NCBI RefSeq assembly: GCF_963853765.1 | Contig: NC_088861.1 | Span: 44,702,001-44,766,000 of the forward strand | Length of the DNA stretch: 64,000 bases | Source of the DNA: Magallana gigas | Taxonomy: Eukaryota | Direction of reading: 5' to 3' | In this document: positions 1,115 through 3,088 of the stretch, piece by piece | How the letters are laid out: each line of letters begins with the position of its first letter | How positions within the stretch are numbered: position 1 is the stretch's first letter | Program-made: the position numbers and the translations under genes | The notes under the pieces: generated by a model | The model's database searches: none | Told to the model about the DNA's origin: nothing | The model's input: only the letters and a program-made list of their open reading frames with translations

Positions 1115-1323
1115 TTACTTCTTACCTTCGATGTTAATTCCTATTTTGGCCAGCGCTCCAACCATTTGAGTGACGCTGCAAGTCTCAGACTGACCAATAG
1201 AATACTCTCTGCATATCTGCCAGAACATCTGGGACAGCCCTGATGTTCTATACCTGTCTACCTCATCGAGCTGAGAACATGTTAGTCCTAATTCTCTTCC
1301 TAGCGCTGGAATCTCGTCATATC
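1115..1323 (-). CDS. TIR-DD gene coding exon 4 (Death domain, stop codon)
   Basis: Acceptor tttacag|GA; encodes YDEIPALGRELGLTCSQLDEVD...GALAKIGINIEGKK*. Confidence 0.8.
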
Positions 1324-3088
1324 CTGTAAACAAAGGGGAAAAAGCAATGTACATTAATTGTACATCGACAGAGCATCGTTATTATGACAGAGATAAAGCG
1401 CAGTAATTTCATAATCACTTTGCAACTGAGAGAAGTGTTTTAGTTCTTTAACAAATCATTGTTCTTGCAAAAGATTATACGGCATTTCATGTACTATTTA
1501 TCAAAATTCTTAACCAAATCAATTTATATTCTAAACTGAAAAACACCCTCTAAAACTTACTTTCTCTTTTTACTTATATTATATCTAGATGTTTTTCATA
1601 TCCATAACCTAAATTCTCTCAATGCTATCAACTCTGAAACCATCAAGTCCCCCCCTTCCCCCTTTCAGAGATATGGAGAATTCTAACCGACCTATTAGTC
1701 CCTGGTATCGGTGGAAGAAAGCAGCGACCTCTGAAGGAACTCTCCTGATACCGGAAGCGGAAGTCCCCGTGTTGGTACCGGATCTTGTTCTGGGGTTAAC
1801 GTCAAGGGACAGTACTCTGTACAGATTATCTACCATTCTCCTGTCAGACCTATCCACGGTATCTTCCGATGAACTGTCATTGTTCCTCTTCACAGCTCTC
1901 TTCAGGCATTTTATCTCTGCCTTCAACTACAAACAACATTATATTACAGATTTTTTGATTGAATTTTGGTCTACATATACTTTTCAAAGAATTGAAGGAA
2001 TAAAATAATACAGTTCCTAGGTACCCCTCATTAAAGAATAGACCTGGAAAATTTAAAACATGTACGGGAAAATATTAACAAAATAAGCTAGTATGTATTT
2101 AAACTAGTGGTCATTTTTCTTTTACTAGAATAAATCATCAGCTAATAGAAAACCAATTGCAATAGAAATAATAACAAAACAAATTTTTAATCACCTGATC
2201 TTTCTCTTGCTGATGTTTGACGCACTGTGCAGCCACTTCCGCGGCATACGAATAAGGGCAGACATTTCGATCGGAGAGCTTTGCTTGCATTTCTTCCAGC
2301 TGGGCCTCCAGTCGCTGATTTGCTGTCTCTAAGTCGTCACACTCCTGCATACGGATATGAATAAGATCATTGTTTCTTTTCTTCAAATGAGCTATTTCAG
2401 CGATAAAGTTGTTTACGGTTCTACTAAGAGCGCCCATTTCCTCACATTTTTCTTTCCCTTCTATGTTCCACAAGAATTCTTTGACCAGATCAATCTCGTA
2501 GCAAGGTTTTGGGTTCCCTAATTTGAATAAAGGCATATATCGCTTCATTAACTTACATGAACAATTTATCTCATTCTGCAGACAAGTAAGCAATTAAGGA
2601 TATTAATGTAAGTGAACATCACCTAAACGTATATATTCTGATTTGCGTATGCAAACATACGTACCCCGGATCCTTTGTTTTATTCCCTTAAGAAGTTTAC
2701 CAACCCAGTCTTCCAACGGTTGGTCCATTCTTCCAGGAAGAGAATCTAGCTTCCTGAACAAAGAAGGTATCTTCACGTCATCTAGTTCCACAATCAGTAT
2801 CTTCCTCCTAAAGTCCATGGCCAGAGCAATCTCATACTGTAGGTATTTACAATCCTCCGCAATGGAACCTTTGGAGGCGAAGGCCAGGACGAGACTACAT
2901 GTAGGGATGACGCCTCTAGCTGTCTCAATACGTAGCTGAACCTCTCCATCCCGGAGCCTGCAGAAACAGGTGAATCCGGACCGTTCCAACCGGGGTAGAA
3001 GCTGTTTGACAAGGTTGCAGTCGCCTTCGATATCTCCACAGGCGAAGTATATGTCAATACATTCTCTGTTAGGAAAGCGAAGAGCCAT
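1115..3088 (-). CDS. TIR / coiled-coil / Death-domain protein, 396 aa, 4 coding exons
   Basis: Exons 3088-2665, 2517-2195, 1926-1692 and 1323-1115 (424+323+235+209 = 1191 nt). All introns are GT-AG with consistent phases 1,0,1. N-terminal TIR fold motifs (DIYFAC, FTCFCRLRD, LVLAFAS, YLQYEIALA, KILIVEL), heptad-rich middle, C-terminal Death-domain pattern (IGYDEIPALGRELGL...MVGALAKIG). Confidence 0.8.
1692..1926 (-). CDS. TIR-DD gene coding exon 3 (linker and start of Death domain)
   Basis: Acceptor tttgtag|TTG. Donor ATAG|gtcggt is chosen because it is the phase-1 site that completes the Death-domain motif. Confidence 0.65.
2195..2517 (-). CDS. TIR-DD gene coding exon 2 (coiled coil)
   Basis: Acceptor aaattag|GG in phase 1, donor CAG|gtgatt; encodes ETANQRLEAQLEEMQAKL. 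Confidence 0.75.
2665..3088 (-). CDS. TIR-DD gene coding exon 1 (TIR domain)
   Basis: ATG at 3088 with an in-frame upstream TGA; acceptor ttccag before 3142; donor G|gtacgt. Confidence 0.85.

What the first reader, a model, noticed from the sequence alone, without database searches (positions are those of the whole stretch)
1115..3088. Reverse-MyD88 protein (TIR, coiled coil, Death domain) with a SARM1-like catalytic glutamate
Seen: the spliced 396-aa product has an N-terminal TIR, a long heptad region and a C-terminal Death domain. Known: MyD88 has the opposite order (DD then TIR). The alphaC segment EDCKYLQYEIALA resembles SARM1 HDCKDWVHKEIVTA, whose Glu is the NADase catalytic residue. An N-terminal TIR joined to an oligomerising module is also the layout of oyster TIR-STING. 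Inference: this could be an NAD+-cleaving immune effector switched on by Death-domain assembly, or a MyD88/IRAK decoy. The fragmented ORF track hides the architecture. This is the best candidate for an undescribed system in the window.
Basis: partly seen in the sequence, partly recalled or inferred. Interest (0 to 1): 0.75.

Follow-up and report, generated by a model that had tools for sequence, protein, structure and literature searches.

The report
Oyster TIR–Death–CARD adaptor gene
This domain combination was not found in the papers searched, and it could link Toll-type immune signalling directly to caspase recruitment.

Summary
The minus-strand gene model is largely right. RNA contigs from three studies, plus raw stranded reads from a fourth, confirm the three coding junctions (2665/2517, 2195/1926, 1692/1323) and add a 5'UTR exon (from 4477).

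The 396-aa product is wrong at its end. The main mRNA splices from 1126 to an exon 512 bp left of the window that encodes a CARD. A predicted tail exon follows, giving about 524 aa: TIR, helical region, linker, Death domain, CARD.

- **Domains:** each is divergent and scores at or below Pfam cut-offs, but several independent lines support each.
- **Conservation:** the gene is single copy. Contigs from other oyster samples keep the DD exon followed by the CARD exon.
- **Glu86:** it sits at the catalytic position of enzymatic TIRs, but TLR TIRs share that Glu. The partner Ser (SARM1 S567) is Ala here, and sequence profiles hit TLR15/2 and oyster TIR-STING rather than SARM1.

The best reading is an adaptor bridging TIR complexes to DD/CARD assemblies, something like MyD88 plus CRADD in one chain. 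NADase activity is possible but untested. The scan's index held only this same finding.

The parts
4477..4535 (-). 5' untranslated exon (at least these bases; the true start may lie further upstream)
   Evidence: Joint 3141->4477 (skips 1335, CT..AC) in contigs of X2 and X10. X10 record 10 covers 4477-4535. The donor is G|GTAAGT.
2665..3141 (-). Exon holding the 5' leader (3089-3141, with a 9-codon uORF at 3100-3126) and CDS codons 1-141 plus 1 base: the whole TIR domain
   Evidence: Pfam TIR_2 gives E 5.8e-4 at 20.8 bits, below the cut-off of 28. The AF2 model has pLDDT 78 and pTM 0.76 with a beta-alpha-beta fold. Foldseek gives probability 1.00 to TIR-1, SARM1, TIR-STING, MilB and DNPH1.
3041..3043 (-). 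Codon 16 (GCC, Ala), at the position of the conserved TIR serine (SARM1 S567, the 'FISY' motif)
   Evidence: Alignment A1 shows Ala here, Ser in orthologs P0009, P0001 and P0005, and Ser in the bacterial TIR_2 sequences. Codon checked. The role of the Ser is from bioRxiv 10.1101/2025.04.09.647920.
2831..2833 (-). Codon 86 (GAG, Glu), at the alphaC position of the catalytic Glu of enzymatic TIRs
   Evidence: (helix 81-92). That alphaC carries the catalytic Glu in SfSTING, ThsB, MilB, RUN1 and SARM1 is from PMC9402430.
2195..2517 (-). Exon encoding residues 142-249: a short linker and the main helical, coiled-coil-like stretch
   Evidence: Joints. Only weak Pfam matches to coiled-coil families (KLRAQ, ZapB, HALZ; E 0.02-0.06). 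The heptad score peaks here but is not above shuffles.
1692..1926 (-). Exon encoding residues 250-327: the end of the helical region, a Ser/Thr/Arg-rich linker and Death-domain helix 1
   Evidence: Joints. The helix-1 segment is nearly identical in the ortholog contig L054, while the linker has diverged.
1126..1323 (-). Exon encoding residues 328-393: Death-domain helices 2-5
   Evidence: RIPK1 death domain chains are the only PDB sequence hits, apart from one chance-level row at E 0.73 in the profile search (E 0.04 alone, 0.002 with ortholog profile A2). Atlas feature neighbours are Death clusters (0.89, 172 of 256 features). The top Foldseek rows for a weak model are RIPK1, FADD, ankyrin and PIDDosome death domains. 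An HMM built from oyster death domains ranks the real region 1 of 2001 against shuffles.
1..1125 (-). First part of the intron between the DD exon and the CARD exon. The CARD exon lies at window -512..-793 (L009:9207-9488). The predicted last exon starts at about -1240.
   Evidence: splice and frame. (CARD). (repeat and insertion polymorphism). (an AATAAA 467 nt into the last exon fits the contig length).

Best explanation
This is a single-copy, expressed and conserved oyster gene with one 5'UTR exon and six coding exons, the last two lying left of the window. It encodes a cytosolic protein of about 524 aa.

Domain order: N-terminal TIR domain (1-141), a helical and probably self-associating region (about 165-262), a flexible linker, a Death domain (about 313-392), and directly after it a CARD (about 397-486) with a short acidic tail.

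The most likely function is a signalling adaptor. The TIR would dock on other TIR domains (TLRs, MyD88-type adaptors or other TIR proteins). The DD and CARD would then nucleate or join death-fold assemblies, recruiting DD proteins and CARD-bearing caspases or kinases. In effect this puts a MyD88-like input and a CRADD-like output into one chain.

Shown here: the transcript structure, the domain identities and the conservation. Inferred: every interaction and the direction of signalling.
For: - **Transcript:** joints in four independent runs, minus-strand reads, and the splice from 1126 to the CARD exon.
- **TIR:**
- **DD:**
- **CARD:** Pfam CARD at E 1.3e-4, CED-3 CARD at E 0.0035, atlas score 0.94 with 203 shared features.
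- **Conservation:** the TIR exon has pN 0.20 against a saturated pS of 0.835. The DD exon followed by the CARD exon is kept at 59-77% identity in two other contig sets, and DD helix 1 is nearly invariant.
- **Copy number:** single copy in the genome.
- **Precedent and context:** all three domain classes act through homotypic assembly (established knowledge of MyD88, CRADD/PIDDosome). Zhang et al. 2008 describe amphioxus genes that fuse innate-immunity and apoptosis domains as 'direct connections' (PMC2575513). Molluscs lack APAF-1 and are reported to have CRADD as their only CARD activator (PMC11463336), which leaves room for a second, TIR-gated one.
Against: - No interaction, localisation or phenotype data exist.
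- Every domain is at or below its Pfam cut-off: TIR_2 20.8/28, CARD 22.4/23.9, and Death gave no hit.
- The DD model is low-confidence (pLDDT 62) and helix 6 is very short or missing, which could impair one DD interface.
- Self-association of the helical region got no verdict and the heptad signal is not significant.
- The exon 5 to exon 6 junction is predicted only.
- The conserved Glu86 and the bacterial-type TIR_2 character would also fit an enzymatic TIR.
Confidence: 0.55

Rival explanations
1. NAD+-cleaving effector. The TIR is an enzyme of the SARM1 or bacterial TIR_2 type. It is switched on when the coiled coil, DD or CARD drives higher-order assembly, and it depletes NAD+ or makes an ADPR-derived signal. 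The death-fold domains serve as the oligomerisation switch.
For: - Glu86 lies in alphaC at the catalytic position.
- The nearest sequences and feature neighbours are bacterial TIR_2, ThsB and Pycsar-type TIRs.
- The best structural matches by TM-score are SARM1 and TIR-1 (0.70-0.74) and the N-glycosidases MilB and DNPH1.
- An aromatic residue (Tyr82) sits four residues before the Glu, where SARM1 is recalled (from memory, not checked here) to have Trp (for the oyster codon).
Against: - The Ser beside the catalytic Glu is Ala16 here.
- TLR1/2/15 and TIR-STING TIRs carry the same Glu.
- The clade-only profile hits TLR15/2 and TIR-STING, not SARM1.
- The AF2 alignment was dominated by bacterial TIRs, which may bias the model towards enzyme-like shapes.
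- No assay has been done.
Confidence: 0.25
2. Negative regulator or decoy. The protein caps or sequesters TIR, DD or CARD partners (oyster MyD88s, IRAK-like, CRADD or caspase CARDs) and so dampens signalling, in the way the truncated oyster MyD88 variants are proposed to do.
For: - DD helix 6 is very short or absent (the sequence, the helices), which could leave only some DD interfaces usable.
- Oysters have TIR-only MyD88-like genes that have been suggested to act as competitors (PMC4346834).
Against: - Nothing specific supports this reading.
- Four conserved modules under purifying selection are more than a simple decoy needs.
- The truncated-helix inference rests on a low-confidence model.
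Confidence: 0.15
3. The reader's 396-aa TIR-CC-DD protein (intron-retained isoform ending GKK) is the functional product, and the CARD-containing form is minor.
For: One low-depth contig (X1 record 2, depth about 5) runs unspliced through 771-1150.
Against: - Spliced contigs have depth of about 57-159 and leave the window exactly at 1125/1126 in X1, X2 and X10.
- The donor GAAG|GTAAGA is a consensus site.
- The CARD exon is conserved behind the DD exon in other species, with the same GRPM start.
Confidence: 0.04

Closest known systems
MyD88 (Death domain - intermediate domain - TIR)
   Same: It combines one TIR with one Death domain in a cytosolic adaptor-sized protein. The predicted TIR fold matches MyD88 TIRs at TM 0.64-0.67.
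   Different: The order is reversed (TIR first). A helical region of about 100 aa and a long linker lie between the two domains, and a CARD is added. The TIR is of the TIR_2 type, with no significant sequence match to MyD88 from the protein alone.
CRADD/RAIDD (CARD - Death domain), the PIDDosome adaptor for caspase-2
   Same: A DD and a CARD are directly adjacent in one chain. Molluscs are reported to rely on CRADD as their only CARD activator (PMC11463336).
   Different: The order is DD then CARD. The protein is about 320 aa longer, with TIR and helical modules. No close sequence relation was seen: the CARD's nearest paralog in the genome is 31% identical at E 0.018.
SARM1 / C. elegans TIR-1 (ARM - SAM - SAM - TIR NADase)
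   Same: This is the best structural match for the TIR model (TM 0.70-0.74). The Glu sits at the catalytic alphaC position, and an oligomerising module is joined to a TIR.
   Different: There are no ARM or SAM domains. The TIR is N-terminal. The protein alone and its clade profile give no SARM1 sequence hit; SARM1 was reached only with a profile that mixed in bacterial TIRs. Ser567 is replaced by Ala, and activity is unknown.
Oyster TIR-STING (PDB 6WT6)
   Same: It comes from the same kind of animal and has an N-terminal TIR fused to an oligomerising signalling module. It is the second-best PDB sequence hit of the clade profile (E 0.0029), with the Glu aligned.
   Different: The C-terminal module is a cyclic-dinucleotide-binding STING domain, not death-fold domains.
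Amphioxus 'direct connection' hybrid genes (TIR-NACHT, TIR-NB-ARC-WD40, DD/DED/CARD hybrids; Zhang et al. 2008, PMC2575513)
   Same: The principle is the same: domain shuffling that wires innate-immune input domains directly to apoptosis-type output domains in a marine invertebrate.
   Different: The lineage (a bivalve) and the combination are different. TIR-DD-CARD is not named in the passages read. No paper in the searchable library contains the terms TIR-CARD, CARD-TIR or TIR-DEATH-CARD.

Membership tests
TIR domain superfamily (Pfam TIR_2, PF13676) | Profile match above the curated cut-off (28 bits) | tested here: inconclusive
   The window protein scores 20.8 bits at E 5.8e-4, below the cut-off. 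Ortholog P0001 scores 28.5 bits, above it. phmmer reaches bacterial TIR_2 proteins at E 5.8e-11 to 9e-4.
TIR domain superfamily (Pfam TIR_2, PF13676) | Flavodoxin-like five-stranded beta-alpha fold | tested here: met
   The AF2 model has pLDDT 78 with the order E-H-E-H-E-H-H-E-E-H. Foldseek gives probability 1.00 to many TIR structures.
Enzymatic (NADase) TIRs: SARM1, plant TIRs, bacterial ThsB/AbTir type | Catalytic glutamate in helix alphaC | tested here: met
   Glu86 aligns with the conserved Glu of the TIR_2 sequences and lies in predicted helix 81-92. The feature is not discriminating, because TLR1/2/15 TIRs have the Glu too.
Enzymatic (NADase) TIRs: SARM1, plant TIRs, bacterial ThsB/AbTir type | Conserved serine next to the catalytic Glu (SARM1 S567 / SNC1 S26) | tested here: not met
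   The residue is Ala16 in this genome (GCC at 3041-3043). It is Ser in orthologs P0009, P0001 and P0005. The reported requirement for the Ser is from bioRxiv 10.1101/2025.04.09.647920.
Enzymatic (NADase) TIRs: SARM1, plant TIRs, bacterial ThsB/AbTir type | NAD+ cleavage that depends on the Glu and on oligomerisation | not testable with these tools
   This needs a biochemical assay.
Death domain (Pfam PF00531) | Profile or sequence match to known death domains | tested here: inconclusive
   The exon-4 ORF gave no Pfam Death hit at E<=1. RIPK1 DD chains are the only hits in the PDB (E 0.04), and with the ortholog profile they lead at E 0.002 ahead of one chance-level row at E 0.73. An HMM built from oyster death domains scores 8.2 bits, rank 1 of 2001 against shuffles. 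Atlas neighbours are Death clusters at 0.89.
Death domain (Pfam PF00531) | Six-helix bundle | tested here: inconclusive
   Only exon 4 could be folded by reference. It gave four helices at pLDDT 62. The top Foldseek rows are death domains, but the best E-value is 0.27. Helix 1 is inferred from conservation. Helix 6 appears very short.
CARD (Pfam PF00619) | Profile match above the curated cut-off (23.9 bits) | tested here: inconclusive
   The score is 22.4 bits at E 1.3e-4 over profile positions 4-84 of 85. CARD_2 gives E 7.6e-4. CED-3 CARD gives E 0.0035. The atlas score is 0.94 with 203 shared features, and 55 hits are CARD clusters.
MyD88 family | N-terminal Death domain followed by a C-terminal TIR | tested here: not met
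   The order is TIR ... DD-CARD.
CRADD/RAIDD | Two-domain protein with an N-terminal CARD and a C-terminal DD | tested here: not met
   The DD precedes the CARD, and TIR and helical modules are present in addition.
SARM1 family | ARM repeats and tandem SAM domains upstream of the TIR | tested here: not met
   No ARM or SAM hit in any exon. The TIR starts at residue 1.

The most novel reading that the evidence does not exclude
An animal TIR NADase whose activity is templated by Death-domain or CARD filament assembly. A single chain would couple NAD+ cleavage, or production of a nucleotide signal, to caspase recruitment. This would be a fusion of SARM1-type and PIDDosome-type cell-death logic, and a second, TIR-gated CARD activator in molluscs, which lack APAF-1.
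Probability: 0.2. Interest if true: 0.85.

Novelty: new variant of a known kind. Interest (0 to 1): 0.6.

Why it matters
All four modules belong to well-known families, and domain shuffling among them is a known theme in marine invertebrates. The particular chain TIR-helical-DD-CARD was not found in any paper I could search, though.

Each of its domains falls at or below standard Pfam cut-offs. The gene would therefore be missed by the domain censuses of bivalve TIR, DD and CARD proteins.

If it works as an adaptor, it gives oysters a direct wire from TIR receptors to CARD caspases. That would qualify the published view that CRADD is the only CARD-containing activator in molluscs (PMC11463336).

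If the TIR is enzymatic, it would be a new way of controlling a TIR NADase in animals.

Either reading can be tested directly, because the gene is single copy, expressed and small.

Tried and rejected
- **Alternative exon 1-2 junction:** donor TAT|GTTTGC with acceptor cag|AAT would give 418 aa. Rejected, because the RNA joints show 2665|2517.
- **My own framing error:** I first read the 1126 junction as ...GDQ*. I had dropped a G. Corrected from the genome sequence.
- **Full-length homologs:** The search for homologous proteins could not reach them because of its length window. The three searches returned only exon-sized ORFs from Logan genomic contigs. The 1.8-billion-representative search found just 8 hits for the TIR exon.
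- **Complex prediction:** two copies of the helical region gave no verdict (score 0.02). This is no evidence either way.
- **Heptad score:** my crude score did not exceed shuffles.
- **Fold search of the exon-4 model:** no match at E<=0.001.
- **High RNA depth at 501-800 and 3501-3650:** Rfam and tRNA scans of 1-6000 found nothing to explain it. Both stretches are interspersed repeats.
- **TIR tree:** a tree with SARM1, MyD88 and TIR-STING was not built. No reference sequences were available as ids, and identity is about 15-30%, so it would be unresolved.
- **Gerdol et al. 2017:** the bivalve TIR-DC census is not held in the library, so I cannot exclude that it lists this family.
- **P0005:** this 32%-identical TIR comes from an ENA contig for which no DNA was available.
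Full report
**Gene model**

The finding lies on the minus strand. Mechanical ORFs and a three-frame reading show four open segments. An alternative first junction giving 418 aa was also possible on sequence grounds.

RNA evidence settles the choice. Twenty public runs hold the stretch, and the RNA-type runs hold about 0.53-0.61 of its words, which is roughly the exonic share. 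I laid X1, X2 and X10 (Logan contigs, three studies) and X21 (raw stranded poly-A reads, a fourth study) on window 501-5000. This gives joints that skip 147, 268 and 368 bases at exactly those places, all CT..AC on the + strand. Raw-read first mates lie on the + strand only.

The same contigs add a 5'UTR exon (joint 3141->4477). The genome is 564 Mb in 29 contigs, and the runs are labelled oyster.

All contigs stop matching at 1125/1126, where the minus strand reads GAAG|GTAAGA, and they run on for 166 to 756 more letters. The first 30 of those letters occur once in the genome, at C9:44701458-44701487. That is 512 bp left of the window's first base, directly behind a cccag acceptor.

Read in the correct phase, the ORF continues through a 282-nt exon. 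I first mis-framed this junction and then corrected it. That exon is a CARD:
- Pfam CARD gives E 1.3e-4 at 22.4 bits over positions 4-84 of 85, and CARD_2 gives E 7.6e-4.
- The only natural PDB sequence hit is the CED-3 CARD, at E 0.0035.
- The language-model neighbours are CARD clusters, at 0.94 with 203 of 256 shared features.

A consensus donor (GAAA|GTAAGT) ends the exon. A phase-compatible acceptor 447 nt on opens a 37-codon tail and a stop. An AATAAA lies 467 nt into this last exon, so exon 5 plus exon 6 come to about 760 nt. That fits the 756 nt by which the X1 contig extends beyond the DD exon. This last junction is predicted, not observed.

Unspliced coverage there is about 5, against about 150 for the spliced form.

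**TIR domain**

- **Pfam:** the first coding exon scores below the TIR_2 cut-off (20.8 against 28 bits, E 5.8e-4). A 66%-identical ortholog passes at 28.5 bits.
- **Sequence relatives:** in 1.8 billion cluster representatives, only 8 proteins reach E<=0.001. They are exon-sized oyster ORFs, one 32%-identical mollusc-like ORF, and bacterial TIR_2 proteins.
- **Paralogs:** there is no paralog in the genome at E<=0.001, although the genome has at least 150 TIR_2 matches.
- **Structure:** an AlphaFold model built from a 12-row alignment has pLDDT 78 and pTM 0.76, with the expected alternating strand-helix order. Foldseek gives probability 1.00 to TIR-1, SARM1, TIR-STING, MyD88 and the related N-glycosidases MilB and DNPH1. 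TM by query is highest for SARM1 and TIR-1, at 0.70-0.74.
- **Feature neighbours:** these are bacterial TIR_2, ThsB and Pycsar-type clusters.

**The glutamate**

Glu86 (2831-2833) lies in predicted helix 81-92 and aligns with the conserved Glu of the TIR_2 sequences. In enzymatic TIRs this alphaC residue is the catalytic one (PMC9402430).

The feature is not specific to enzymes. A profile made only of the oyster clade hits TLR15/2 TIR (E 0.0014) and oyster TIR-STING (E 0.0029), with the same Glu aligned, and it does not reach SARM1. TLR1 also aligns at this Glu.

The serine that contacts the catalytic Glu (SARM1 S567, reported as needed for NADase activity and as a phospho-switch) is Ala16 in this genome, but Ser in orthologs P0009, P0001 and P0005. 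No ARM or SAM domains are present. NADase activity is therefore open.

**Helical region**

Residues of about 165-262 are free of Pro and Gly and rich in Glu, Lys, Gln and Leu. They give only weak Pfam matches to coiled-coil families. My heptad score peaks there but does not exceed shuffled sequence. A two-copy complex prediction returned no verdict. 'Coiled coil' remains a reasonable guess but is not shown.

**Death domain**

The whole DD spans an exon junction, so it could not be given to the tools by reference. I did not type it in. Exon 4 (helices 2-5) gives the following:
- RIPK1 death-domain chains are its only PDB sequence hits at E 0.04. With a four-ortholog profile they lead at E 0.002, and the only other row is a chance-level match at E 0.73.
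- Its atlas neighbours are Death clusters, at 0.89 with 172 shared features.
- The AlphaFold model is weak (pLDDT 62). Its best Foldseek rows are RIPK1, FADD, ankyrin and PIDDosome death domains, but none is significant.
- An HMM that I built from 17 oyster death domains scores the spliced region at 8.2 bits, in register over helices 2-5. That is higher than all 2000 shuffles.
- The segment at the end of exon 3 that would form helix 1 is almost invariant in an ortholog, while the preceding linker has diverged.
- Helix 6 is very short, because the CARD starts about five residues after helix 5.

**Conservation and population data**

- Against the ortholog contig L004, the TIR exon has pN 0.20 with synonymous sites saturated at pS 0.835.
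- Contigs from other samples (L050 and L054) carry the DD exon followed on the same strand by a CARD exon with the same GRPM start, at 59-77% identity.
- Same-species genomic contigs hold the TIR, helical, DD and CARD exons within 3.7 kb.
- RNA reads show several amino-acid polymorphisms (for example Q84L, I136V, K262E, I370F), but none at Ala16 or Glu86.
- The DD and CARD exons have no close paralog. The best other CARD is 31% identical at E 0.018.

**Interpretation**

The protein is a cytosolic chain of TIR, helical region, DD and CARD. All of these modules act by homotypic assembly. The simplest mechanism is therefore an adaptor that docks on TIR complexes and nucleates DD and CARD assemblies, with MyD88-like input and CRADD-like output.

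This matches the 'direct connection' genes described for amphioxus (PMC2575513). It is also notable because molluscs lack APAF-1 and are said to have CRADD as their only CARD activator (PMC11463336).

The enzymatic reading has about one chance in four. The decoy reading has about one in seven.

**Literature**

Searches for TIR-CARD, CARD-TIR, TIR-DEATH-CARD and related terms found nothing relevant. The oyster immune-gene survey lists ARM-TIR, IG-TIR, TIR-TPR and EGF-TIR, but not this combination. The main bivalve TIR census, Gerdol et al. 2017, is not held in the library. Novelty is therefore stated with that reservation.

Noticed in passing
window 505-771 (insertion spans about -162..773): A young ~267-bp interspersed repeat sits in the DD-to-CARD intron. 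It has 96-100% identical copies on all chromosomes, with 2243 first-look candidates. It is part of a 936-bp segment that is absent from same-species contig L012, so this is an insertion polymorphism. The repeat is very abundant in RNA contigs, with many different flanks.
   Followed up: partly
window 3540-3660: An older repeat family of about 120 bp (about 80% identity, 1057 first-look candidates) lies inside the 5'UTR intron. It explains the RNA depth spike at 3501-3650.
   Followed up: partly
window 3100-3126 (minus strand): A 9-codon upstream ORF (ATG ... TGA) sits in the 5' leader, 11 nt before the main ATG. The main ATG has a good context (AAAATGG).
   Followed up: no
window 1198-2882: RNA runs show many coding variants in this gene: R139K, I136V, K96 (two changes), Q84L, K262E, D271E and I370F, plus synonymous ones. 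In run X21 all reads carry the alternative haplotype across the TIR exon.
   Followed up: partly
L018 (G000:C2:52637542-52637811): This is the nearest paralogous CARD (31% identity, E 0.018). It is a bona fide CARD (50.8 bits) at the N-terminus of its ORF, so it is a candidate CARD partner or relative. The rest of its gene was not examined.
   Followed up: no
window 2794-3057 / protein P0002: One Logan contig encodes a fused ORF that starts in the alternative frame and switches into the TIR frame near residue 73. This is either a frameshifted allele or an assembly error, seen in a single sample.
   Followed up: no
window 772->4783 and 3963->4154: Two non-canonical joints (AA..AC and GT..CT) appear in single RNA contigs with short sides (20-24 nt). 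They are probably repeat-mediated chimeras rather than splicing.
   Followed up: no
whole genome G000: The six-frame Pfam scans list 150 TIR_2 matches (the number scored), 80 CARD matches at E<=0.01 and 35 Death matches at E<=1e-4 (all counts are lower bounds). This gene's TIR, CARD and DD exons appear in none of these lists, so all three are too divergent for such scans.
   Followed up: partly
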